DNA of 64,000 nt from Lytechinus pictus (Eukaryota), in the NCBI RefSeq assembly GCF_037042905.1, contig NC_087247.1, forward strand, positions 14,818,001 through 14,882,000. The letters run 5' to 3'. The number at the start of each line of letters is the position of its first letter. Position 1 is the stretch's first letter. Of this stretch, positions 22,001 through 60,500 are shown one piece after another. The notes under the pieces are model-generated. The model saw only the letters and a program-made list of their open reading frames with translations, did no database searches and was not told where the DNA came from. The position numbers were made by a program, and so were the translations under genes.

Positions 22001-25000
22001 TTGCGAGACGAATAATTCATATTGTTTTGCGACATTTATTGGTTTGTTTTCAATGAGATATCTATTCACGGTTATTTATTAGATGCTTTCATTATTCAAA
22101 TTAAGAAATATGTGAACTGAAGTAAGTTGATTCGATTTAGAATTCGATTTTTGAAAGTTTTTTCCTCTGTGAAATGTTGACTTCACCCATTTTGAGAATG
22201 GACGGTCCCGCATGCGTCACATGCTAATAATTAGGTCACCGTATTATTTTTAAACCAAATTGAGTTATTTTTTATTAATTTTTTATTTAAACATGTATGA
22301 GCTGTTTAATGATGATGATTTTTTTTTCAGCTGTACAAAAAGAAGAAATTTTAAGGTTATGATACACTTGTGATATTTATTCTCCACTGCATGCTCATGA
22401 ATTATTCATAAGTGGATGATGAATGGTGGACAAGTCCATTATGTGTAGATAGGGTTAGACTTAGAGGGAAAATTTCTGTGTTGTGCAATAAACTCTGACA
22501 TGTGCACGATGAATGTAAACATGATTTCACTATTAAAATGTACATTTATTTGTTTACATGAAATGATGAGTTGACCTTAATTTGAATTATTGATTCTGAA
22601 TTTTTTAATGAAACCAACTTGGCCTTTTTTTCCCCTGAAATTAGAAGTCTACATGTACACAGTCACAGTAGATTTACCAAAGAAGTTCATAAGAACAAAT
22701 TAAGAGCAGAAATGTTATTGACAGGCTGACAAAATCTTAGAATATGACCAATACACAGAATACAGATATTTATTATTTTGTTTGTGCAACTTTTTTTTTT
22801 TTAATGTTTAGACATGTGTCCTCCTTTTCCCAATTTTCACATGTCAGATTTTTTTTTTTACAATATTAAACAAATATAGGGGTCTAATGATAATAATTAT
22901 ATGATATTAATAGTAATAATAATGATAATAATTATGATAATAATGATTATAATTTAATAATGATAATGTAATTTATAATATTGATGATGATGATATTAAT
23001 AACAATGATAATATTTTAATAACAATAATGATAATATTAATAACAAATAATATAAATAACAATAATGTGGTAGGCACTCATTCAATGAACAAGGTTATGA
23101 TATAACATTGTTCTCTGTTACTATTTATCCCCTGTGTGGAGAAATAAGGTTGGCAATGTTTGGCTTATTTTCTCTTGTTCTTGTGATTTTTTACACTGTC
23201 AATTTCCATTACAACTATTCATCGTATAACTTGGCTTGAAGTAAATTGAATTCTTTTGATTATTTTTTCCATATTAAAAATGAAGAATGTAAATGTTTTC
23301 TTGCAATTTTACTCTCCACCAATAGAGGGCCTACACAAAAGTATGCCCAAAATTCAAGTTTTTATGCTCTCTGGTGAATGAAAAAATGATCCCTAAGCTA
23401 TATGAATTAAATTAAATTGCAGATGTATGGAAATGAGTATATTTGGTTACAAAAGTGGTATTTTAATGATTTTTTTTTAATGTGTGTTGTATACTGCATA
23501 GATCCACTTGTAGGCCTATACATGTAGATTCCCACAGGCAGGGTGGTTGTAGTGAACAAGTGATGGTAGGGTCTACATGTAGTTATGTTTATTTTATGCG
23601 CTTTGACCAAAAATTCTTTTTTTCCTTAAGTTGTGAATTATTAACTTGGGGATCTTTTTTTTTATTCAGAGTGCACAAAAAATGTGATTTTGAGCATTTT
23701 TGTGTAGGCCCTCTATTGATTGAGAGTCATTTGCCCAGTTTGCCAATAGCTAAGTTTTTTTTAAGTTTTAAAAAAGATTTAAACTGATAAAAAACCTCAT
23801 AATTTGACATTTTTAAAATCAACATTTCACAAAATCCCACAAACGTCCAGACTATAAAAATATTATTAGTTTAATTTGTGATGCTACATGTATGTGTCAG
23901 AACTGCGGCCAAATGCAACAGGTCGTGTAATTTCAAATCATATTTCAAGATATATTGCAACTTTTATATTTGCTGTTCCCTGTAAAAGTGAGCAATGTGT
24001 CTGCTCATATTATCCCACCAGAGGCAGCGTAGAGTAATTCGGGAGTAATTACTACAAAAGCATTTTTCCTTTTGTAATTCACCTATAAGTTTGACTTTAG
24101 GAATCTTTGGTCTACAATCTGCAAGAAATATGCAATGAAACACATGTGTAACATATTTTTACCATTGCGGCATCAAAGTGGCAATAAAGAGAAAGTGTTG
24201 GATGGTTCCCCTTGTCTTAAAACTCCTTGACTCAACCCAGGTGAGGTACATGTAAATGGGTACCTGCAGGCAGTAATTCCTCAAAAAGTTGTGAGCACCG
24301 AAAAAAAAGAATACCAGCTTAGCCAGGGTAATATAGGAGCACCTTGAGCACCTAACATGGTGGATACATGTGCTAGATACAAGTTACGTATTATTTATTT
24401 ATTATTCATAATGCTGAAAATTTCATTGAAATTCAAATATGTGAAATATAGTCTTGAAGTTTGGCTTGGTTTTTTACAAAACATTAAGAGAGGGAACCTA
24501 TGACACCCATTCAAATCATAAATGCTTTATACCGGTATCATACATGTATTCAATTCTATGTGTGAGTTGTAGCATCAATGATGAAGAGAAAGTGCCAGTG
24601 TCTCCTTCAGGAGTCGCTCTAGCTTTGGATTAATTTTTGTCCTGCATCAGAATTTTATCAAGTTTAAGGTTTTTTTTTTATAAATTAATTTCAAAATTTG
24701 ATTAATTCAACAGGAGCATCATTTGCAAAGGGCTATTTCAGCACAGCAAGTGTATGGCTCAGCAAATCATCTGGTTATTCCAACCCCTGAGGTTCTCTCC
24801 AACCAGGAACTGTATGAAAATCTGTATGATGCAAGCTGCAAACAAAACAGACAGTACATTCATGTGCAGCGTGAGTACAATAATTCTTTCGTGACTTCCC
24901 TTTTGCCTTCTTTCTCTACTTTTTATCTTGAATTTTCCTGTTGACATTTTTTGTGCTGTATGTGTATCAGATTAAGTTCCGTTGAAGTTTGTGTGGGGGG

Positions 25001-28000
25001 TGTAGGGACAGTGATTTTCCGTTTAAAAAAATTGCCTTTTCCGTTTCAGAAAATCTCAAATTCCGTTTCAGCATGTCAGAAAACGGAAATTCTGTTTCCC
25101 CATAGACTTTGTACACACGGAAAAATGACAATTCCGTTTACACATTTAATAGCAAAATCACAACACGCACACTCGCACTGGTCAAAATTTGTATCTGCTA
25201 CTGTACCAACAACACAATAAAATCCGTTCTAATCGGATCTATGCGGGTGCATAAAATATTTCTACACACCCATTTTGCATGCATACATCCTCACCTTTCA
25301 TATTATTAGCATTATTTCACGGTGAAATGATATTTCATCGATAATTTGGGGGGTTTTTGGACATCGTTATCATCAGTCAACGGCTATTGCCAATCCGCCA
25401 TCTTGGATTTTAAGACCACGATATCGTGCTGTTACATCTTCAAACGTAGAGGGCAGCAACACACGACCGTGTAAGGAGTTGAACGATATGTGTGCATGTG
25501 AAGCCCAACCCGGCCGGCCGGGTACGGGTACGGTGCGGGGTACAATCGAGTGTGCTGATGTCAAGTGCAGTCACGATGTGTGAATTGTCATGATAGTAGC
25601 GAAGTGAGATCGTGTTTTCTGGGTTTTTGGGGCAATTTAATATTCTCATTTTGTTGTGATTTTGGAGTAATTTCTGTTGCTATTCTGTGTATTTTGAGGG
25701 AAAATACGTTTTCCGTGATTTTCCGTTTGAAATGCCACTTTCCGTTTCAAAAGGCCCTTTCCGTGAATTCCGTCCGTTTTCCGCGATCGCGGAAAATCAC
25801 TGTCCCTAGGGGTGGGGAATATCTCATTTCATCATTTTTATGATTAATTGCATATCAGTATAATGAAAGGTTTCAACCTTCATTTTTTTTGTGATTTCAG
25901 ATGGTGATTCACTTGCAGCTCAAATAAATTTTATAAATCTGCAGACCCATCCAATTTAAAATAAACTTCTGAACTAACCCTTTATAGTTTTATTTTCTTA
26001 CATAGTTAAATATATCAGTTTCAAGTAGTGATTTTAATCAAAATATCAACGCTTTTGGTGGGAATTGTTATTTTAATTGTGTTTTGCTATATCAGTGAAA
26101 TTCGATTAGTTAATTATCAAAGGTTGTGACCATTCATAGTAAGAAGTAAATTGACATTTTTTAATCCAGTTTTTCCAGCAAGGCCATTTTTAAAAGGGTA
26201 CTTTGAAAGGGAAGACGATGCTCACTTTGTAGGGGCATTTGTAATTGACACAAATACGCTCATTTACTTGACAGCCCTTAGCATGGAGCAGGACATTCCA
26301 GACTATGATATGGACTCGGGGGATGAGAGATGGTTGAGTGAAGAGGCAAAACTCTTCACAGATATCACTCCTCTCAAATTTGAGATCATGATGGACAGAT
26401 TGGAAAAGGGGAGCGGTCAGAGGGTAAGTACGAATCCGAACAAAATAACACACGGGCTTGGGGCGATTTCATCCCCAAAATGCTCAAAAGAGCTCTGGAA
26501 ATCCCCATTCATTGCAATGGTAAAGTTTATCCAATGTCGCAAATTTAGGTAGTAGACAGTAGAGTCTGAAAAGTAGCTCCCCAAAATAAAAATAAAAAAT
26601 AATTTTTTGCTTGGGTCACCTTACCAGTAAACTTGTAATAATAATAAGTACACCTTCCATTAGTGTAATATTCGCATAAGTCTATGCATTGTTTTTTTTT
26701 TAGACCAGATTATGAAAAACGTGTACCTCTTTCTAGTCAAATTTCTACTAAGTTTAACAAATTACTGCGGTCCGAATAGAGTTGAATTGTTATATAGAAA
26801 TTAATGCATGGAAATAATTTTCATAAACATAAACAACTCATTTAACTTTGCAACCGTCTATGGCAACTTCCTTGGAAACCATGATTTTGAATGGCTTTCA
26901 AGCCATGTTACCATGGTAGTTGCCACAACTGCAATGCTGCAATAGTTGTAACTCCTTTATGAAACTGCCCCTGATCTATAAAGTATTATATTGTTCTTTT
27001 TTTTCATATCGATATTTGGAAAAACTTTGTACACAAAAACATTTTTATAATGGGGGGGGGGGGGAGGTAAAACTTTGTTCTATAAATTGAAGAAAAACTC
27101 AACATTTTGGCTTATTTAGTCTGTTTTAACATGTTCATCTAAATCAATGAGTCTATTGCTTGCTTGGTATAATTGTATGATTGCCCTTAGTGATGCTTTA
27201 AATAGGAGTTTCTATAAATTTCCCAATGTTATACACATTTCAGGGTATTGGGGATATTAGTGTTGTTTCATATCCATGACATTCTGTATGTCACGTCTAT
27301 CCCGTTACGAAGAAAGGGCACTTTAGGGGCTCCTGTATGACAACAAATTACATGTATCCTGTAAAGCTACTATTTTTGTCCTCTATCATCACAATTTTCA
27401 GGTGATGAATCTGAAGGATGCCAAGGCTCTTTTGAAAGAGGATGATGATCTAATCATAGCAGTCTATGACTATTGGCTCAACAAGAGAGTCAGAGTGGTA
27501 AGTGTTTACAAATCTTAATTGTTCTCTCTCTTTCATATTAAAGTGCTATCAACCATGCATCAATAAAATCCGGTACATATGTATTGTCATTATTGACTTG
27601 TGATAATAGTTAAGGCATGCAAATTGGGAATTTCCTAATATTCTCAATCTTACATGTATCATCAACCATGTTCTTTGCTAGAGTGCATTCTAATTGGTTC
27701 ATTTTCTATTAACCCAGGGACATGCGCTGATACCCGAGGTCAAACAAGAGAAGCGTGATGGCTCTACCAGTAATAATCCCTATGTAGCTTTCAGAAGACG
27801 AACAGAGAAGATGCAGACGAGAAAGAATCGCAAGAACGACGAGGTTTCATATGAGAAGATGCTCAAACTCAAGCGAGACCTTTCCAAGGCAGTGTAAGTT
27901 CCTTTTGATATTCAATTAAGGCGGAACTGCAAATCTGGCAAACCTTGTCCAACAAGTTGCAAAACGATTGTTAACATCATACGTATGTCTTTATGGTAAC

Positions 28001-48500: not shown

Positions 48501-51500
48501 CAAAACCTTTGTACATCATCTGACAAGTATTACCATTCAAACACTAAGTGCAATACTTATCAACCATCAATCACCATCTGATTGTTATATATAATCCATT
48601 AAAAACCCATATGACTAGAAAGCTTCATCTTTATACACCATACAAACCTGTTATCACAATCTGATCATAATCAATACTTTATGTGCGAAAAGAGTTTAAA
48701 CACAATCTGCAAGCAGAGGTAAGGTATAACATTCTAACTATATGTTTATATGAGGGCCTCATAACACAGAGGTTTGTGATGGAGAGCAAATATGAAAGAA
48801 CACTTCTGATTGGTCCCTGGGTAATATTTTGAACAACGTGTGCATGTAACATTGACCATGATTGGCCATGGTCATTTAGCGATTAATCGCCAGCCTTTGT
48901 GTTAATGAGCCCTAGTATTCAACTATGACACTACATTCACTAGAGTACAGCACCCCGTCTGCTGTTTTTCTTGTTATTGTATTTTTTTATGATAACTTCC
49001 AATATAAAGTTAAAATTTAGATTGCTTATTGATTACTTCATTTCCTATGCTTCATTTTCAAATTACAATTCGATTCATTCCATGTAAAGCATTTAGCTTT
49101 TTGGCAAAAAGTTTTTGAAACAAGCCGTAAAAAAACATAATTTTTCAATTTCAGTGAAATATGATAATCTTCCCTTTGACATGGAGAGGATCGAAGCTTC
49201 ATTTTTTCATAGAGTGCCTAAATTTGGGTGAGAATTAAGAAAATAGATAATGTAACCATTACGTGAAAAAATAGCAAAAATGATGAAAGTTTACAATACC
49301 TCCACAGCAAATCTAATTTCATCACCTTTTTTGTTCAAGGAAGATTATTTTTCTGCGAATTTAGACACTCAAGAGCACATTTCCGCTCTTTTGGTATTTC
49401 ATTTATCTCACTTTTATAAATGTATATCAGATGCAAAAAGAGAAGCTTTGCCATGATTTGTAATTAATTGTTATAAGTCAACTCTGTAGTCTTTACAAAT
49501 ACAAGACCCTGTCTTACAAAAAGTTATGATTGATCCAATCAATCCTAACTATGGAATCTATCAATGTCATAAGGAAATAGGAAATCTAAACACTGTCATT
49601 TATTGACAATGATGCATGTATGAGTATACATCCTATAAAGAACACACTTTGAATGGACATGAGCATTGTAGATGTTGATGTCTTTCCATAGCTAAGAATG
49701 ACTGATTTGATCACAACACTATGATAGATTGGTTCCAGGCTTACCTTTGGTTCGATGAGAATTCCTTTCTCAGTAATCTTTGGTAGTTCTTTTAGGTTGG
49801 TATATAGGAACTCAAACTCCACGTTCCATTGGCCAAGCATGTCACCGCGTAAGGTGTAGATCAACCGCCTATCAAAATTAGAAAATAATATACCACAATC
49901 AAACTCCACATTCCATGTCACCGCGTGAGGTGTAGATTAATCGCCTATCAAAATGAAGAAAAAAAAATTCCATTGGCCAAGAATATATGTCACCTCTTGA
50001 GGTGTACATCAGAATGATATACATACACATCATGGTATTACATAAAGTACACTGATCTCTACCAACTTGCTTTTTACTTGCACCTAGATCACTTCAGCCC
50101 ATAACATGTTACCAATTATTTTGTGCAATACTGCGATGCTCTGCATTTTTGGGAGGTTCCATTTTTCCCATTATGGTAAAATCCTCAATTATGTCACAAT
50201 AACCTTGCTTGAGAAAGATCTAGATACGCAACCACAATCTACATACACCCTAGAAGTAAAACAAGCATTGGCTCAAGCGCATTTATTTACATGTATGAGA
50301 AAACCATGAAGTTCTTACCAGAATTCTCTCTTGGAAAGGAGAATAAAATTGTTTCCCTCCAATATAGATTCATGTTTTCGGATGTAGAATATAGAGTAAA
50401 TAACCACATCACGTCAAGACAAACCATCACTTACTCAGCAACCTAGGAGTTACATGCTGTTTGCCTTGGAGGTGATAGCTTCCCCGATACCTTAACCAAC
50501 AGCGATCACTTCCTTATCATTCTTAAACCTTTGGCGCCAAAGTCACCAATTGGTGCCATGTAATAATTCAACATCGCTACAATGGTATGATCTGAGATAA
50601 GCTTACTTGTCTGTAGCTAGTACGTAACTCTTCTTGTCCGGTGTGACCTGCAAGTGAGCAACGTAGTCCTCTGTATGAGCATATTTTCCCTTGTCTACTT
50701 GGAGGAGGAGAGAGTTGCCGAGAGCCATGGACTTGTTGTAGGCTCGGATGATACCGTCTGCACCGATGTAGCGAGGTTCACGCAGCTTCCGGATCTCAAC
50801 CTCGGATTCTACAACTCTGTTGGGGGGAGAAGTGGAAGAATAGGTTTGGTTTAAGGGCACTTTTGTTGCGCTTTCATTGTGACATCACTCACACGTGATA
50901 ACCCACAGACTACTCAACACCATGCATCAAACACAGTGTTTGTCTTTTGAAGTGATTACAAATCTCATTTAAACACTGTGATCTCACGTATCACAAGTAT
51001 TTGTGTTAGAGCGCCACCTTGTGGTGGAATACTCTGAATAATGTTTATGCGACAATAGTAATTCTCAGGGATAATTCTTCACTTATCAGTGCTGCAGTGA
51101 AGTCATGTGCTGCCTAATAAAGTAAGGTTCAATCATACAACTATTGTGAGGTGTCATTTTTATATTGGCATGGTGGCAGCGGTGGGATTTGTCATTCCTT
51201 TATTGTCATATAGTTCTACTGATAAATCCTCATTTCATCCCCCTGTACATCGGATTCATCATTCAGTTAAATATTTCTTTAATTTTTCAATTCTTATTCA
51301 CGACCACATCATCTTGTATATTTGAAGGAAAAGTATTCGACCAGGAAGCATCAATGATGAGAAACGTTGGTGGAATCTGTACTACGAAACATACAGTTTC
51401 CAGCTTGTGAAAATGGCAATCATTTAGTTTCAGACATGACATGATGTCACATTTGATACAAGACACAATAAGAGCATTTCTATGCTGATCAATAAAATTT

Positions 51501-54500
51501 TGTAAAATTCATTGTGTACTTGATAACAGGTAAAAGAAAAACATGTCTCTACATTTTGAAGTGTGATGCTTTCAAACTGACTGAATTGCTATGACCATAA
51601 TGTCAACGTCCAGTTCACCCTTGAAAGTCTTCAATGTAGAGCTTACCTTCTTATTCCCTCAAAGGTCCCGCTGGCAAAGTCAATGATACCGCCAGTAGGC
51701 TTGGCTACCACTCCAGCCAGACCCTTGCCAACACCCTTGAAGAATCCCTTAGCTCCTTCCTTCTTGGCACCTTCAAATGGATTCTTAACAACGCCACTCA
51801 CACCTTCGTAGAAACCCTGTCATAAAAAAATAATCAAGATGTATTAGATGCATCTTTCTGTTCAGATGGGTAGAAAGCACATTGGACAGACAAACAAGTA
51901 GAATCTTTTGCCTTAGGCATGAGACTCGAACATTAGGGGCTCTTGCTTTTCTCCCTTCACCTCTTTTCTCATGCCTATATAGTGAATGTCAACTTTTTGA
52001 CAACCACATGCAGATCTTGAATAGTCAATTTTTACATGTTTTACTGTTTCTGGAAAATTTTGTAACAGAATAAATAGAGAAAATGAATAAGATGACAATT
52101 GTGCTTCAGACAAAAAACGTTTATGGCAAGGATGATGGTGATAATCACGGTATAATTGATGACAGTTGATGATAATTATTGTCACAATCATTCTAACAAT
52201 ATTGATGATATACCTTCATTCCTACTTACCATAACAAGACCCTTGCCACCTCTGGCTAGACCCTCTTGGAATGTAGCAGGTCTTTGATTGATAGCTTGTT
52301 GTCTCTTCTTCTTATAATCTTCATCCATGGTGAGTGCGGCCAGACCTTTACCCAAGGTTCCAGTGATGCGGGATACAGCTCCTGCTGCACCACCTAGAAT
52401 TAAATAATGTTGATGGTTACATCATCATCATAATTACCGTCATCATTGTTGCCATTATCACCCCCACCACGCCACCACCATGACAATCAGAACAATCGTC
52501 ATCCCCATCATNNNNNNNNNNNNNNNNNNNNNNNNNNNNNNNNNNNNNNNNNNNNNNNNNNNNNNNNNNNNNNNNNNNNNNNNNNNNNNNNNNNNNNNNN
52601 NNNNNNNNNNNNNNNNNNNNNNNNNNNNNNNNNNNNNNNNNNNNNGTCAGGAATTGCGAAATTGATTTTTAGGATGTTATTCAATATATTTAGATAATAT
52701 ACATGCTATACATACCAACTGCATGTCCAAAGAGACTCCTCATACCAAGAGCTACACCCTCAGCAAACTCCTCAGGACCTTGTACAATTCCCTGGTTGGA
52801 TAGAGAAAGAAAAAAAGATTTGTCTGTAAAGAGTATTTCTTAGAAGTTTCAAATTATCCAAATCACATACTATGGAATTTTAACCTTAATACTCCTGGGG
52901 TATTTCTGGTCATTTTATAATTAGATTAGGGGTAGGGGGGAGGGGTGGGTTGATTATGGACCCCTATAAAATGTTGACTGTAGAATGTGTGATCATTATA
53001 AAGATTTACTTATTGGACTTAAAATTCACTCAATCTTTTTATCTTATTTCACATGGTTTAATTACGCTAATCTTTATGGGAAATTAGAATTCAGCTGAAA
53101 ATCTATCAATAAAACCCAGAACTGGAGTATTAGGGCTAAAAGCATTTGAACAATTAATAAAAACACAAACAAGAAGAAATGGGAAAACATAACCTGACAA
53201 GGTTTGCACAAAACGCCAGTTCCTACTCCTCCGATGAAACCAAATGGGTTACCAATCACATCAAACCCAAGAACAAGGACATAGAGCTGTTTGATGGTCT
53301 GATTAAGAGTAATGGACTCACCTGATAAGGTTCATAGAAGAGGTCTTTGACACCTGTTCCGACTCCTCTGACGAAACCAAATGGGTTACCAATCACATCA
53401 AGACCAAGAACGAGAACATAGAGCTGTTTGATGGCCTGATTAGAGTAATGGACTCACCTGATAAGGTTCATAGAAGAGGTCTTTGACACCAGTTCCGACT
53501 CCTCTGACGAAACCAAATGGGTTACCGATCACATCAAGACCAAGAACGAGAACATAGAGCTGTTTGATGGCCTGATTAGAGTAATGGACTCACCTGATAA
53601 GGTTCATAGAAGAGGTCTTTGACACCTGTTCCTACTCCTCTGACGAAACCAAATGGGTTACCAATCACATCAAGACCAAGAACTAGAACATAGAGCTGTT
53701 TGATGGCCTGATTAGAGTAATGGACTCACCTGATAAGGTTCATAGAAGAGGTCTTTGACACCAGTTCCTACTCCTCTGACGAAACCAAATGGGTTACCAA
53801 TCACATCAAGACCAAGAACTAGAACATAGAGCTGTTTGATGGCCTAATTGGAGTAATGGACTCACCTGATAAGGTTCATAGAAGAGGTCTTTGACACCAG
53901 TTCCTACTCCTCTGACGAAACCAAATGGGTTACCAATCACATCAAGACCAAGAACGAGAACATAGAACTGTTTGATGGCCTGATTGGAGTAATGAACTCA
54001 CTTGATAAGGTTCATAGAAGAGGTCTTTGACACCAGTTCCTACTCCTCTGACGAAACCAAATGGGTTACCAATCACATCAAGACCAAGAACGAGAACATA
54101 GAGCTGTTTGATGGCCTGATTAGAGTAATGGACTCACCTGATAAGGTTCATAGAAGAGGTCTTTGACACCTGTTCCTACTCCTCTGACGAAACCAAATGG
54201 GTTACCGATCACATCAAGACCAAGAACGAGAACATAGAGCTGTTTGATGGCCTGATTAGAGTAATGGACTCACCTGATAAGGTTCATAGAAGAGGTCTTT
54301 GACACCTGTTCCTACTCCTCTGACGAAACCAAATGGGTTACCAATCACATCAAGACCAAGAACGAGAACATAGAACTGTTTGATGGCCTGATTGGAGTAA
54401 TGAACTCACTTGATAAGGTTCATAGAAGAGGTCTTTGACACCAGTTCCTACTCCTCTGACGAAACCAAATGGGTTACCAATCACATCAAGACCAAGAACG

Positions 54501-57500
54501 AGAACATAGAGCTGTTTGATGGCCTGATTAGAGTAATGGACTCACCTGATAAGGTTCATAGAAGAGGTCTTTGACACCTGTTCCTACTCCTCTGACGAAA
54601 CCAAATGGGTTACCGATCACATCAAGACCAAGAACGAGAACATAGAGCTGTTTGATGGCCTGATTAGAGTAATGGACTCACCTGATAAGGTTCATAGAAG
54701 AGGTCTTTGACACCTGTTCCTACTCCTCTGACGAAACCAAATGGGTTACCAATCACATCAAGACCAAGAACTAGAACATAGAGCTGTTTGATGGCCTGAT
54801 TAGAGTAATGGACTCACCTGATAAGGTTCATAGAAGAGGTCTTTGACACCAGTTCCTACTCCTCTGACGAAACCAAATGGGTTACCAGTCACATCAAGAC
54901 CAAGAACGAGAACATAGAGCTGTTTGATGGCCTGATTGGAGTAATGGACTCACCTGATATGGTTCATAGAAGAGGTCTTTGACACCAGTTCCTACTCCTC
55001 TGACGAAACCAAATGGGTTACCAATCACATCAAGACCAAGAACGAGGACATAGAGCTGTTTGATGGCCTGATTGGAGTAATGGCGAACTACCTCCGATGA
55101 TAGCTGCTCTGGGCTGTAGAACTGGTACTCTCTCTCAAAGAAACCAAGCCTAGATGGTGTTTCACAAAGATTTAAGAGTGTCTTAAGAAGCATGCTTAAA
55201 CACCAACATGCACATAATGCGGTGTTGTATTACATACAGGGTTCCCTCATAATAATAATAATAATAATAATATAGAGTATTTCTAAAGCGCCAAATCCAC
55301 ATTATGTGCTCACGGCACTGCGAAAAGGAAATAACAGAAAAATAACATGGAGCAGGAAGGGACATGATGTATGGAAGATCATGGTTTGATGCACATTGCA
55401 CAGGTTTTTATTGTCTGGAATCCAACATGGCTGGCTGCCAAATCCACATTAATCATGTGCTCACGGCACTGCGAAAAGGAAATAAGAGAAAAATTACATG
55501 GAGCAGGAAGGGACATGATGTATGGAAGATCATGGATTGATGCACATGCACAGGTTTTTATTGTCTGGAATCCAACATGGCTGCCTGTGAAAACCCTTCA
55601 TATTGCACGCAAATAAGATTCAATTGCAATTCTAAGGGGGTGTTGCAAGAAAATATTTGCGATCAATTGCAAATATTCTGTTGCAATTTTACAACTGATA
55701 TAGATCAACGTTAGCTGTAGCAAATTAGATTAAACTTCTTGTTTCAAGGAGCAAATTAGCAATCAATCACTAATTTGCAATTAACTGCAAGACAATGATT
55801 GATTTAGGGACCAAAAATTGACTTGCAATTGATCGCAAGCTTCTTGCAACACCCCGATCAGTCATGCTTAAATTTTTATGAAACACTTCCAGGTTGAAAG
55901 GAATGGAGACAGTAAATGAATGGGTTAGGAAGACTACATGGATCAATCGTCGCAAGAAATTTCATTCAATACTTTGAAAATCCTTTTCAATCTTCCATAT
56001 CCCAAATTGTTCAGATTTATACTGTTAATACCATACACTATGTAAAAGAAACAGTCTGTCGCTCACAATTTATATACCAATTCAGTTTGAGTGCCATTTA
56101 AATGGTCTTCTTGTAACAGATACTGACACAGGATTGCACTTGAATCAATGCATAATTCATAGTATTTTCTTTTAATTTGGATGGGTCCAGCTATGGTTAA
56201 CATGAGTAAATGTTTTTAATTAGGTAGATGTAAACTGATTTAATGTGTTTTCACTGAAAGCCCAAGAGTCTAAAATTTCAATAAAATAATCCCTCAAAAT
56301 TGGACAGATTCTACTCACTTGAAGATGACATCATCTACGTTGGTCAGGGTGACCCCAACGCTCTGTAGTAGGAGATTGAGGGCGTTCTGACGGGCGTTGG
56401 CCTGGGCACTCAATAAAGACTTATCCTCTTTGCCGGTCTCTGACAGAGAAAAACTCACATGAATCTAAGAAGGAATGGAAAGACAAGGTTTCAGGTATAT
56501 ATCACCATCATCATCATCATAGTAATAATCTTAATAATAATTTCAGAGCTCACAGCTTTTTGAGGAATTACTTCCTGCCGGTACCCATTTTCAACTATTC
56601 AACTTTAGACCTTGATACCCAATAAACTAATCAGATCATTGTTGCTCATATATGAATATTTGGAACAAGTTTAAAGTTAATCCATCGAATGGTTCCTTAG
56701 TCATTGCAAGTATGAAAATTGGACAGCTGGACAGACGTCCAAAAATGCATCCAGCAACCATCTACAGTGGGCAGAGGCATAATCATCTCTGTAGAGGGGA
56801 TGTTGTGGTCTAGTGGTTCTGCCTCACTTCCTTTCATTCAGTAGGTCATGGGTTCAAATTCCAGCTATGGCGTGATTTCCTTCAGCAAGAAATTGACCCA
56901 CATTTTTCTGCACTCAACCCAGGTGAGGTGAATGGGTATCCGGTAGGATTAATTCCTTGAATGCACCGAGCACTGAAAGGCAGTTCAAGCTAAAACGGGG
57001 GTAATAATAATTGTGCGCCTCGGAATAGATTATTTCTAGGTAGATGGACCTATGCATATGCCTATTATTGTTATTGTTATAAGTGAACTTCTTGGATTTT
57101 GTAAAATACTTTTTTTTCTTCTTTTTTAAAGTGCACACCTGTTACCAAAATGTGCATAGCATTTCCATTTATCTGAATGCAGGATAAAAGAGCATTGCTG
57201 ATTAAATACCTTGCTCACGGGCATAGGTGCTGCTGCCGGGGATCGGCACCTTAGACCACTCAGCCACCTCCATTGAAAGAGTGCTCAAGCTAAAGCTTGA
57301 TTAATAACAAATACGCACTGTGGAATAGATTATTTCACTCCCCAGGGAGTGGAAATTGTGCACTTTTCGTGCGGGATTGAAATGAATCCAATGACCGGGG
57401 TAATAATATGCTGTAACGCGCTTTGAGCCATTCTGGGAAAAGCGCTTTATAAAAATTTGCTATTATTATTATTATTTCTAGATAGATGGACTTATGCAAA

Positions 57501-60500
57501 TGCCTGTAACTATTATTGCTATTAGAGAACTTCTTGGATGTTGTATAGTACTCACCTTAAGTGGAGAGAGATGGAATGAATCATAGAAGTTGAAGTCTTT
57601 GGCCAAAGCAACCTTGACATACTCAGCATCGGCTAACTCTAATCTTATTAGCTCCTTGTCCAACTCAAGCAGAGCAACCTATAAATAAAACAACAAAAAT
57701 ACTTCTTGATGACACATGGAAAGTAAATCTCAATCACATGATTGTTTGAGAGCAGAGAAGTCATCAGACATTTGTGTTATCTGACACAAAATTTTCTAAT
57801 GACTTTTGAAACACAAGGACCTGGTATTAATAATCTTGTCACTTAATTACACCAACACACTAGTCTCTTATCTTGAGTAATTAACAAAACAAAAACAGAT
57901 TTTATTAGATAAAATTGCAGATCAGAAGTACAAAAAGGGTAAATCATTTTATATCCTATACAAAAACAAAGGAATTAAGTGCTTTTAATAAGATGATATA
58001 ATCATTATTATTTTCAATGTCATTATTTTCCACATCTTCTTTGTGTGTAAGATGACTGAAACACCCTCCTTTTGACATCTACAAAATCATTCTCTTCTGC
58101 ATCCAGCTATTCTTTATTAGTAAACTTGCAAGAACCATGGGAGTGTTTCACAAAGCAAATAGTGTTTTTCACCTGCTAATTTGTTCTCAGCCAATCAGAG
58201 GCAAGGATTTCAGTAGCTTATAACAATTGACAGTGAAAATTAACTATTTGTTTTGGTAACACGCTCCTCAGATTTCCATCCTAACCCTATCAATGACTTG
58301 TTCTTCATCCGATTGGAAGATGGCTGCTATGTTGGCCAGGAATCCCATGTCCAGTTTGACCGCCATCTCTTGGACCAAAAGCTTGAGGTACTTGATCTGT
58401 TTGACCGTACTGTGCTCCGAGAAACGAACCATCATGCTGAACTCTAGAAGCTGTTTAGGGGCTGAGGACCAAAAAAAAAAACACACAAATTATTTATATA
58501 TTTTCAGATTTTTTATTTTCCATTTTGTAAAATTGGCTTCGCTAAAATATAATTTATATTTAGGGTCAATGAACTTAGATCATGTTGGGGGAATCATTTT
58601 TTTACTTCCAGATTTTTGTCAGGCTTGGTTTATTCAACGCCGCTGTAGTTTATTTACCAGAAAATATGGTATTTGTAGTTATATAATTTCTACAGAAATC
58701 AAACAGATCAGCAACTATTTCAAAGCTTTGCAAGACTCTTTTGTCATAATGTCTAGAGATTGGAACAGACTGCCTGCAGATTTTAAAGATTCTCTGTATC
58801 TGGAATCATAAAAAAAAAGTCAAATATGATGACATTCAATTCATATCACATGCTATTCCCCACATCTCAAGTAAGTGAGATGCATCAACACTTTCATATT
58901 TTTTTAAAGCAAATGTAAATATTCTCACTATGAATAAATGACTAATACAACAAAACAACAAACAATATCCAATTCTGTGTAGTATAAAAAGTCTACCTAC
59001 CATTCTCAGCTGCCACTGTCTTAGGGAGGGGTACGGGAGCCACCGGGGTAGGGAAGATAGCAGCCGGCATCTGATTGTCCACCTGTAGTCTGTTGATGGT
59101 CAGATGAAGCTGAAGCTGATGCTTAGAGGTACGCACTTGGGCCCACACACCCGAATGGTAGGTACGTCTTAGCTGCTGCTTCTTAGGGGCCAGCATCAAC
59201 ATACGTCCATAGTCAACCTGTGGATAGACAAGACATGCATGAGGTTTACTGAAATGCGATGAAAAAAAGCCGTAAATGAACAGGAATCTAGATTGACAAT
59301 GAAATGATGAATAACTGTTGAAAGTTGGTACATGTACATCTCTAGCAAAGTGGCTAAGAGGGTGTTGGAAGAAAATTAGTAATAAAAATACTACATAACA
59401 GATATGAGGCGCTTACTGCCGGTGTTTCTAAGCGCACTGTGTTCTGATTATGGTTTATACTTGGGAGAGGAAAAAAAAATGACACAACTATTAAAACAAC
59501 TAATACTAATAATCAGAACTGGTGTGCACCTACATAATCAATTGCATATTTCTGTTGCAATTTTATAAATGAGGGATCAATTTTAGCTGTAGAAAATCAG
59601 TTTACACTTCTTGTGGTAAGAAACAGATCAGCTATCAATTGCAAATTGCAATCAATTGAAAGACATATTATTAATTTTGGGTCCCTAAATAGATTTATGA
59701 TTGATAGTAGGTTTTTTGTAACACCCCATAAGATTTTATCAAGGTACCGTACCTCCATGCCATAATCTAACTTGTAAACTCTGGGTGGAAGATCCTTCTG
59801 ATCACTGGCATCTAGTCCTGCCTTGACGAATCCTTCCTCTAAGCTCTTCATCTCCTTCATGCTGAGATCCTTGTATCGACGACGGACCTTGTTCTGCCAG
59901 ATGATCCCAGAGCTGCCAACGAGAAAGAGACAAAATGATAATGNNNNNNNNNNNNNNNNNNNNNNNNNNNNNNNNNNNNNNNNNNNNNNNNNNNNNNNNN
60001 NNNNNNNNNNNNNNNNNNNNNNNNNNNNNNNNNNNNNNNNNNNNNNNNNNNNNNNNNNNNNNNNNNNNNNNNNNNNNNNNNNNNNNNNNNNNNNNNNNNN
60101 NNNNNNNNNNNNNNNNNNNNNNNNNNNNNNNNNNNNNNNNNNNNNNNNNNNNNNNNNNNNNNNNNNNNNNNNNNNNNNNNNNNNNNNNNNNNNNNNNNNN
60201 NNNNNNNNNNNNNNNNNNNNNNNNNNNNNNNNNNNNNNNNNNNNNNNNNNNNNNNNNNNNNNNNNNNNNNNNNNNNGGTGTTGATGACAAAGATGATGAT
60301 GATGATGATGATAATGATATTGATGATAATGGTGATGATTATGATAGCGGTGGTGATAATGATATGATGATGATGATTGTGGTGATGATGATGATGGTAA
60401 TAATATGTTTACAAAGTACTTAGAATCATTCCGATTGCATAAAGTGTTTTTGAAAAGCTGAGTATTAACAATATCTAATGATAATGGCTACCTAACCAAG

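What the first reader, a model, noticed from the sequence alone, without database searches (positions are those of the whole stretch)
53194..55082. VPS13 intron filled by a 13-copy tandem array of its own exon end plus 5' splice site
Seen: about 1.76 kb of the 2162-nt intron (52792-54953) consists of 136-bp units. Each unit is 43 codons ([43 protein letters not shown]) plus GTGAGTC. The true donor is therefore followed by 12 equally good CAG|GTGAGT or CAA|GTGAGT donors and one decayed CAG|GTTATG. Because 136 = 3n+1, reading past the true donor hits a stop ([19 protein letters not shown]), so extending the exon to any distal donor gives a premature stop. The junction resembles exon sequence (AGGTAGTTCGCCAT versus AGGTGAGTCCAT), which suggests a microhomology-seeded duplication. 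Inference: a minisatellite of decoy U1 sites whose copy number could tune productive splicing or NMD of VPS13, or a snapshot of exon/intron gain by tandem duplication.
Basis: partly seen in the sequence, partly recalled or inferred. Interest (0 to 1): 0.85.

Follow-up and report, generated by a model that had tools for sequence, protein, structure and literature searches.

The report
Intron minisatellite repeating a splice donor
Inside an ancient intron of a sea-urchin VPS13 gene sit 13 tandem copies of the preceding exon's last 129 bases plus its splice-donor signal; the array is real, but it is a known kind of repeat (human F7, LMNB2, PDGFA, CBS, IFI6) in which the first donor is normally the one used.

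Summary
On the minus strand, a 136-bp unit (43 codons plus GTGAGTC) is repeated 13.7 times (53216-55083, 97% matches). The first unit is the real exon end. Twelve near-identical intronic copies and one decayed copy follow. They supply 10 donors identical to the authentic CAG|GTGAGT, 2 CAA|GTGAGT donors and one destroyed site. Any distal donor includes a stop codon 20 codons past the true donor.

The host gene is the VPS13A/C-like gene of a Lytechinus pictus-like sea urchin. All 15 L. pictus isoforms retrieved (the cluster lists 15 of its 18 members) join 54954 to 52791, the first donor. The intron is ancient. In Strongylocentrotus purpuratus it sits at the same site, is 544 nt long and has no repeat. 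So this is lineage-specific growth of an intron, not intron gain.

The kind is already described in human genes: minisatellites whose first monomer spans an exon/intron boundary (F7 IVS7, LMNB2, PDGFA, CBS, IFI6). In those, the most upstream donor is used exclusively or predominantly. The most likely reading is a young, near-neutral array with silent pseudo-donors. Copy-number tuning of splicing or NMD is untested. Two extras: unit variants are biased to synonymous sites (P about 0.002-0.008), and a second, decayed duplication spans an acceptor at 49868.

The parts
54954..55149 (-). Authentic VPS13 exon, 196 nt (codons ...LGFFEREYQ...FYEPYQ). Its last 129 nt form unit 0 of the array.
   Evidence: Frame-1 translation. 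It is 100% identical to L. pictus XP_063952525. The junction was resolved exactly.
54948..54956 (-). Authentic 5' splice site CAG|GTGAGT. The last exon base is 54954.
   Evidence: Its PWM score of 12.3 bits is at the 90th percentile of 50 true donors of the S. purpuratus gene.
52792..54953 (-). Intron of 2162 nt, phase 0. About 1760 nt of it is array and about 400 nt is unique sequence.
   Evidence: The orthologous S. purpuratus intron (L001 79896-80439) is 544 nt and has no repeat.
53315..54946 (-). Intronic units 1-12, each exactly 136 nt. They carry 10 CAG|GTGAGT and 2 CAA|GTGAGT pseudo-donors (G of GT at 54817, 54681, 54545, 54409, 54273, 54137, 54001, 53865, 53729, 53593, 53457, 53321).
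53187..53314 (-). Unit 13, the decayed distal copy. It has a 1-nt insertion, a deletion of about 10 nt, about 8-9% substitutions, and a destroyed donor (CAG|GTTATG at 53193).
53859..54674 (-). Higher-order 408-bp duplication. Units 3-4-5 (54674-54267) are repeated as units 6-7-8 (54266-53859): 3=6 and 4=7 are identical, and 5 and 8 differ at 1 nt. Units 2 and 10 are also identical.
   Evidence: Pairwise difference matrix.
54894..54896 (-). First in-frame stop (TGA) reached if the true donor is read through. It lies upstream of every distal donor.
   Evidence: ORF 54894..55193.
52716..52791 (-). Downstream exon ([25 protein letters not shown]...), 76 nt. Its acceptor ...CCAACCAG| is the only strong acceptor in the region.
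   Evidence: Its acceptor PWM score is at the 74th percentile, and no other AG in 55160-52780 reaches the 25th percentile.

Best explanation
This is a young, lineage-specific intronic minisatellite whose first monomer spans the exon/intron boundary of a VPS13A/C-like gene in a Lytechinus pictus-like sea urchin.

Origin (inferred). A tandem duplication copied the last 129 nt of the exon plus the first 6-7 nt of the ancient intron. The oldest copy, unit 13 at the distal edge, has since lost its donor and decayed. A later founder copy was amplified to 12 units by replication slippage or unequal exchange, partly in 3-unit (408-bp) blocks.

Splicing. The spliceosome uses the most upstream donor (54954). 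That donor is the first one transcribed and the only one that gives an exon of normal size (196 nt). The 12 identical or near-identical pseudo-donors are therefore removed as part of the intron. Any rare use of them gives a transcript with a premature stop, which is expected to be degraded.

What is shown and what is inferred. Shown: the anatomy, the strength of the sites, the absence of the array from S. purpuratus, and the first-donor junction in the annotated proteins. Inferred: silence of the pseudo-sites in vivo, the order of events, and near-neutrality.
For: Array anatomy and exact 136-nt phasing. Host gene and species: window exons are 100% identical to L. pictus VPS13A-like, and all 6 decidable differences between L. 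pictus and L. variegatus match L. pictus. Junction: the spliced alignment reproduces 54954|52791 with 0 mismatches. Isoforms: every retrieved protein (15 L. pictus isoforms, 1 L. variegatus, 8 S. purpuratus entries that include this region, 2 Diadema) has a single copy of the segment and EPYQ|GIVQ. Lineage: S. purpuratus has the same intron with donor GTGAGTT, 544 nt and no repeat. History: units 1-12 share a derived T at unit position 36 that is absent from the exon, from unit 13 and from S. purpuratus, so they descend from one founder. The block identities 3=6, 4=7, 5~8 and 2=10 show stepwise expansion. Precedent: in human genes with the same arrangement, only the most upstream donor is used (F7 37 bp x5-9; LMNB2 100 bp x10-15; PDGFA 81 bp x16-18), or that donor plus the next two (IFI6, CBS). 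F7 mutagenesis showed that the pseudo-sites are functional but are out-competed by position (PMC1557585). Intronic minisatellites are common in the S. purpuratus orthologue.
Against: No RNA data were available, and protein annotations are biased towards open reading frames, so they would not report NMD-bound isoforms. The pseudo-donors fully match the MAG|GURAGU consensus. In the F7 study, perfect-consensus pseudo-sites could capture part of the splicing. The F7 rules come from mammalian cells with 37-nt spacing, whereas this is an echinoderm with 136-nt spacing. The excess of synonymous variants among the copies is not predicted by plain neutral decay.
Confidence: 0.7

Rival explanations
1. 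Regulatory decoy array. The 12 pseudo-donors bind U1 and are used, or stall spliceosome assembly, at an appreciable rate. This diverts VPS13 pre-mRNA into stop-containing, NMD-sensitive or intron-retaining products, so copy number sets VPS13 output.
For: Ten pseudo-donors have the same 9-mer as the real site and score at the 90th percentile of true donors. Every distal donor includes the stop at 54896-54894. In human IFI6 and CBS, two pseudo-sites are used besides the authentic one. The reference list of PMC1557585 also cites a study associating the CBS 31-bp VNTR with reduced enzyme activity.
Against: The array is absent from S. purpuratus, so it is not a conserved regulator. No retrieved isoform departs from the first donor. 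In F7, LMNB2 and PDGFA the pseudo-sites are silent. Exons of 332-1828 nt would be atypical beside the exons of about 76-220 nt in this part of the gene.
Confidence: 0.15
2. Assembly artefact. The array or its copy number is produced by mis-assembly of a shorter duplication.
For: No independent assembly or read set could be examined. Exact look-ups of four ORFs from the array found nothing. A metagenome scan for the unit junction also found nothing. An N run lies about 70 nt beyond the next exon.
Against: The units are not identical. Eleven variable sites are arranged in a structured pattern: a 408-bp higher-order block, an edge copy with indels, and a founder-specific substitution. This is what real minisatellites look like, not what collapsed or inflated assemblies look like. 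Phasing is exact over 12 units. The total of 1.9 kb is within the span of single long reads (own knowledge).
Confidence: 0.05
3. Exon or intron birth. The copies are on the way to becoming new in-frame cassette exons (38 codons, using the AATCAG|GCC site inside each unit), or the duplication created the intron.
For: Splicing to AATCAG|GCC would be in frame. Vertebrate-type VPS13 genes have an intron exactly at HYSKQ|AIKQ. Copy variants are mostly synonymous.
Against: The unit-internal acceptor scores 3.8 bits, at the 2nd percentile of true acceptors. Neighbouring units would leave a 22-nt intron. No retrieved isoform has two copies. Unit 9 has an in-frame TAG. The intron pre-dates the array.
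Confidence: 0.03

Closest known systems
Human F7 intron 7 VNTR (37-bp monomer, 5-9 copies; Borensztajn et al. 2006, PMC1557585)
   Same: The first monomer spans the exon/intron boundary, so the authentic donor is followed by identical pseudo-donors competing for one acceptor. In F7 the most upstream site is used.
   Different: The F7 monomer holds 4 nt of exon and 33 nt of intron, and its donor is weak (UGG|GUGGGU). Here the monomer holds 129 nt of exon and 7 nt of intron, the spacing is 136 nt, and the donor is consensus-strength. Splicing and polymorphism are documented for F7 and were not tested here.
Human LMNB2 intronic repeated element (100 bp x 10-15; de Stanchina et al. 1997, as cited in PMC1557585) and PDGFA intron 4 (81 bp x 16-18)
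   Same: Long monomers cover most of an intron and reiterate the exon/intron junction. Only the authentic donor is used. The unit size and copy number are the closest to this case.
   Different: These are mammalian genes. I could not read the primary papers, so the share of exon sequence in their monomers is unknown to me.
Human IFI6 (6-16) intron 2 and CBS intron 13 31-bp VNTR
   Same: Boundary-spanning minisatellites with many reiterated donors.
   Different: In these genes the first two pseudo-sites are also used constitutively, giving alternative products. The units are short. Whether anything similar happens here is unknown.
Intron gain by tandem duplication of an AGGT-containing exon segment (Hellsten et al. 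2011, PMC3265369; potato RdRp, PMC4974935)
   Same: A tandem duplication involving exon sequence and a GT donor changes the exon-intron structure in one step.
   Different: In those cases the duplication creates a new intron whose donor and acceptor both come from the duplicated copies. Here the intron already existed, its acceptor is not duplicated, and the result is only a longer intron.

Membership tests
Boundary-spanning intronic minisatellite that reiterates the 5' splice site (F7 / LMNB2 / PDGFA / CBS / IFI6 type) | Head-to-tail tandem array of a unit of tens to about 150 bp lying in an intron | tested here: met
   Period 136, 13.7 copies, 97% matches. It lies within the intron 54953-52792.
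Boundary-spanning intronic minisatellite that reiterates the 5' splice site (F7 / LMNB2 / PDGFA / CBS / IFI6 type) | The first monomer contains the authentic exon/intron junction | tested here: met
   Unit 0 (55082-54947) is the exon end plus GTGAGTC. The authentic junction at 54954|54953 was confirmed by spliced alignment to the L. pictus protein.
Boundary-spanning intronic minisatellite that reiterates the 5' splice site (F7 / LMNB2 / PDGFA / CBS / IFI6 type) | [quoted passage not shown] | tested here: met
   Ten of 12 have the identical 9-mer CAG|GTGAGT, and two have A at position -1.
Boundary-spanning intronic minisatellite that reiterates the 5' splice site (F7 / LMNB2 / PDGFA / CBS / IFI6 type) | Mature mRNA made from the most upstream donor (or the first few) | tested here: inconclusive
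   All retrieved annotated proteins use the first donor. No transcript reads were available, and NMD-bound forms would not be annotated.
Boundary-spanning intronic minisatellite that reiterates the 5' splice site (F7 / LMNB2 / PDGFA / CBS / IFI6 type) | Copy number varies among alleles (VNTR) | not testable with these tools
   Only one haplotype was seen. The L. pictus and L. variegatus loci could not be fetched because the gene range exceeds 100 kb.
Intron gain by tandem duplication (Rogers model) | The intron is absent from orthologues that lack the duplication | tested here: not met
   S. purpuratus has the intron at the same codon and phase without any repeat. Homology ends at EPYQ followed by GT in many other genomes.
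Intron gain by tandem duplication (Rogers model) | Donor and acceptor are both supplied by the duplicated copies | tested here: not met
   The acceptor at 52791 lies in unique sequence. The AG site inside the unit scores at the 2nd percentile of true acceptors.
Regulatory decoy 5' splice sites / decoy exons | Decoy sites are conserved among related species | tested here: not met
   Absent from S. purpuratus. L. variegatus was not testable.
Regulatory decoy 5' splice sites / decoy exons | Decoys bind U1 and lower productive splicing | not testable with these tools
   Only sequence complementarity can be shown.
VPS13 lipid-transfer protein family (host gene) | VPS13_N, VPS13_M, VAB and VPS13_C domains in the encoded protein | tested here: met
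   The L. pictus protein that matches the window exons carries PF12624, PF25033, PF25036 and PF25037. The window holds its last ~685 residues (about aa 2611-3295). The duplicated segment lies between VAB and VPS13_C and is not covered by any Pfam model.

The most novel reading that the evidence does not exclude
The array is not silent. A copy-number-dependent share of VPS13 pre-mRNA is spliced from pseudo-donors, or stalls on them, and is destroyed. This would make the minisatellite a polymorphic dosage modifier of a lipid-transfer gene. In addition, the synonymous-biased variation among copies could mean that the functional exon end and its intronic copies keep exchanging sequence by unequal recombination. 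The intron would then archive past exon alleles and could feed variants back into the exon.
Probability: 0.12. Interest if true: 0.5.

Novelty: new member of a known kind. Interest (0 to 1): 0.3.

Why it matters
This is a natural test of how a spliceosome chooses among identical 5' splice sites. It offers 12 consensus-strength pseudo-donors at 136-nt spacing in a non-mammalian deuterostome. To my knowledge (not checked here), L. pictus can also be bred and edited. It extends a class so far described in a handful of human genes. The units are almost entirely exon sequence, so the case also shows how exon sequence can be turned into intron sequence in bulk: the intron is about four times the length of the S. 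purpuratus one. If pseudo-donor use turned out to be appreciable, copy number would act as a dosage variant of VPS13. As it stands, this is an instructive but unsurprising example.

Tried and rejected
1. Pfam on the two flanking exon peptides gave no hit because they are too short. Gene identity came instead from a representative search and from spliced comparison.
Isoform X3 is not on record. Only S. purpuratus was obtained.
3. I looked for independent short-contig evidence of the array. A similarity search with the 99-aa read-through ORF found no Lytechinus contigs. Exact look-ups of the 99-, 46-, 44- and 30-aa array ORFs found nothing. A scan of JGI metagenome contigs for the unit junction found nothing.
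4. I tried to reach the L. variegatus array from the neighbouring gene. That gene, convergent on the + strand with an EPL1 domain at about 26 kb, appears to lie too far away for a 10-kb flank to reach the array. No full-length query was available either, so I abandoned this.
5. I tested whether the sequence after unit 13 is orthologous to the start of the S. purpuratus intron. The alignment score was reached by 60 of 300 shuffles, so it is not significant. The idea that unit 13 lost its donor by a 4-nt deletion stays a guess.
6. Microhomology origin: AGGTAGT (55093-55087) resembles AGGTGAGT, but it is 3-4 nt out of register with the unit boundary, so it is not accepted as shown.
7. Exonisation of units through AATCAG|GCC was rejected on the PWM score and on the retrieved isoforms.
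8. The Turri 1995 paper (PMC306954) is not held. The IFI6, LMNB2, PDGFA and CBS facts are taken second-hand from PMC1557585.
Full report
**Observation**

The gene lies on the minus strand. Tandem Repeats Finder reports a single long-period array in the window, at 53216-55083: period 136, 13.7 copies, 97% matches, no indels, score 3475. Reading the minus strand and locating donors shows GTGAGT at 54953 and then exactly every 136 nt down to 53321. A decayed CAG|GTTATG follows at 53193.

Cutting the array into units gives the following.
- Unit 0 (55082-54947) is the true exon end plus GTGAGTC.
- Units 1-12 differ from the consensus by only 2-3 nt.
- Unit 13 has a 1-nt insertion, a deletion of about 10 nt and about 8-9% substitutions.
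- Ten copies keep CAG|GTGAGT. Units 4 and 7 have CAA|GTGAGTT.
- The real exon has CCA TAT CAG and all copies have CCT.
- Reading through the true donor reaches a TGA at 54896-54894 after 19 codons, so any distal donor would include a premature stop.

**Host gene and organism**

A search with the 65-aa exon peptide returned VPS13 proteins. Named relatives are VPS13A/C-like proteins of echinoderms, hemichordates and amphioxus. Among echinoderm proteins, the Lytechinus pictus isoform is by far the closest. It is 100% identical within exons, against about 87% raw HSP identity for S. purpuratus. At the six decidable residues that distinguish L. pictus from L. variegatus, the window always carries the L. 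pictus state.

The window holds the last ~685 residues of the protein (about aa 2611-3295). A spliced alignment resolved 11 introns of 322-3716 nt. One of them is donor 54954 / acceptor 52791, 2162 nt, with no mismatch. The duplicated segment lies between the VAB and VPS13_C domains, in a very conserved stretch that no Pfam model covers.

**Which donor is used**

No transcript data could be reached. All annotated proteins that could be retrieved contain one copy of the segment and the junction EPYQ|GIVQ, which is the first donor. These are 15 L. pictus isoforms (the cluster lists 15 of its 18 members), one L. variegatus protein, 8 S. purpuratus entries that include this region, and 2 Diadema proteins.

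I built a position weight matrix from 50 exactly resolved introns of the S. purpuratus orthologue and scored the region with it.
- The authentic donor and its ten identical copies score at the 90th percentile of true donors. The two CAA variants score at the 42nd.
- No other GT in the region reaches the 25th percentile.
- The only AG that reaches the 25th percentile of true acceptors is the authentic acceptor at 52791.
- The in-frame AATCAG|GCC site inside each unit scores at the 2nd percentile.

So the intron offers 13 good donors and one acceptor. Use of the units as cassette exons is unlikely.

**Age and origin**

The S. purpuratus locus (L001) has the same exon, the donor GTGAGTT, an intron of 544 nt at the same codon and phase, and no repeat. 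All 13 window units align to the single S. purpuratus exon end. A marine-metagenome contig carrying an echinoid-like copy of the exon also shows no repeat after its donor. In many unrelated genomes, genomic ORFs lose homology exactly at EPYQ followed by a GT codon. The intron is therefore ancient, and the array is a lineage-specific insertion into it. This is not intron gain.

Within the array, units 1-12 share a T at unit position 36. The exon and unit 13 have C there, and S. purpuratus has A. So the 12 good copies descend from one founder. Units 3-4-5 are repeated as 6-7-8 (two identical pairs and one pair differing at 1 nt), and unit 2 equals unit 10. This shows stepwise, multi-unit expansion, as is typical of minisatellites. 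The structured variation also argues against an assembly artefact, although no reads or second assembly could be examined. The suggested microhomology (AGGTAGT versus AGGTGAGT) exists, but it is 3-4 nt out of register with the unit boundary, so it remains only a possibility.

**Comparison with what is known**

The arrangement is a described class. Borensztajn et al. 2006 (PMC1557585) study the human F7 intron 7 VNTR. Its first 37-bp monomer spans the exon/intron boundary, so the authentic donor is followed by 4-8 identical pseudo-sites. Only the most upstream site is used. The pseudo-sites are functional when the upstream ones are inactivated. Selection behaves as a 5'-to-3' scan, with a contribution from exon definition.

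The same paper lists other cases.
- LMNB2: 100 bp x 10-15. [quoted passage not shown] Only the authentic donor is used.
- PDGFA intron 4: 81 bp x 16-18, likewise.
- IFI6 and CBS: the first two pseudo-sites are also used.

The urchin array meets the structural criteria of this class. It differs in three ways: its monomer is almost entirely exon sequence (129 of 136 nt), its donor is consensus-strength, and it occurs in an echinoderm. It does not meet the criteria of intron gain by tandem duplication (Hellsten et al. 2011, PMC3265369; PMC4974935), because the intron pre-exists and the acceptor is not duplicated.

**Most likely mechanism and rivals**

My estimates are as follows.
- About 0.7: a near-neutral young minisatellite with silent pseudo-donors. 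The first donor is chosen by position, through co-transcriptional or scanning order and exon definition. The exon is 196 nt with the first donor and 332-1828 nt with any later one.
- About 0.15: the regulatory reading, with decoy U1 sites and copy-number-dependent NMD or intron retention. It is not excluded, because annotation would not show unproductive isoforms and the pseudo-sites are strong. It has no positive support, and the array is not conserved.
- About 0.05: assembly artefact.
- About 0.03: exon or intron birth.

**Unexplained**

Of the ten variable coding sites that arose among the intronic copies, seven are synonymous third positions. The count is eight of eleven if the exon-specific CCA is included. 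The expectation is 23-28%, giving a binomial P of about 0.002-0.008. One variant is a nonsense codon (unit 9). The sample is small. A plausible cause is unequal exchange that shifts unit 0 into the array. Unit 0 is the real exon end, and its population variants have been filtered by selection. This could be tested by resequencing the exon in a population.

**Also seen**

A second, older boundary-spanning duplication lies in the same gene. It consists of three decayed copies, about 76-81 nt each, of the acceptor plus the exon start, just upstream of the exon that begins at 49868. The pseudo-acceptor ends at 49945. The S. purpuratus gene carries five intronic minisatellites, and none touches an exon. 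The two N runs (52512-52645 and 59944-60276) lie in introns and were left untouched.

**Verdict**

This is a new member of a known kind, of moderate to low interest. Its main value is as a natural splice-site-choice experiment in an urchin.

Noticed in passing
window 49868-50030 (- strand): Decayed tandem triplication (period about 76-81 nt) spanning the acceptor of the VPS13 exon that starts at 49868. A pseudo-acceptor TTTTGATAG ends at 49945 and is followed by a diverged copy of the exon start. A third, older copy lies upstream. It is the mirror image of the donor array, and here the authentic site is the most downstream one.
   Followed up: partly
window 53315-54946 (units 1-12): Variants among the intronic copies are mostly synonymous third-codon-position changes (7 of 10, or 8 of 11; expected about 25%; P about 0.002-0.008), although the copies are not expected to be translated. 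Several variant states (unit positions 90, 96, 123, 136) equal the states of other echinoid orthologues.
   Followed up: partly
window 26151-26549 (+ strand): An ORF matches Pfam EPL1 (enhancer of polycomb-like), E = 2.5e-8. It is probably an exon of a neighbouring gene convergent with VPS13.
   Followed up: no
window 52512-52645 and 59944-60276: Two runs of N (134 and 333 nt). Both lie within VPS13 introns: the 322-nt intron after exon 52791-52716, and the intron 60792-59913. A (GAT)n microsatellite at 60292-60396 abuts the second run.
   Followed up: no
proteins P0058, P0060, P0072 versus window 55068/55067: Vertebrate-like VPS13 genomic ORFs show an additional intron at HYSKQ|AIKQ. This urchin, S. 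purpuratus and the metagenome echinoid lack it. The position coincides with the weak AATCAG|GCC site inside each array unit.
   Followed up: partly
L002 1-698, L003 1-601: Marine-metagenome contigs (ENA, one from Tara Oceans project PRJEB4352) carry an echinoid-like copy of this VPS13 exon. The protein is 96% identical, with many synonymous differences. The donor is GTAGAG, and there is no repeat in the roughly 110 nt that follow.
   Followed up: partly
L001 1913-2217, 40728-41436, 53612-53675, 58782-58943, 61930-62154: The S. purpuratus VPS13 gene contains several intronic minisatellites (periods 28-157 bp). None overlaps an exon. The two 46-bp arrays share a similar consensus and may be one dispersed repeat family.
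   Followed up: partly
window 22885-23066: Long impure (TAA)n / 21-bp AT-rich microsatellite, in the lowest-GC stretch of the window (0.29).
   Followed up: no
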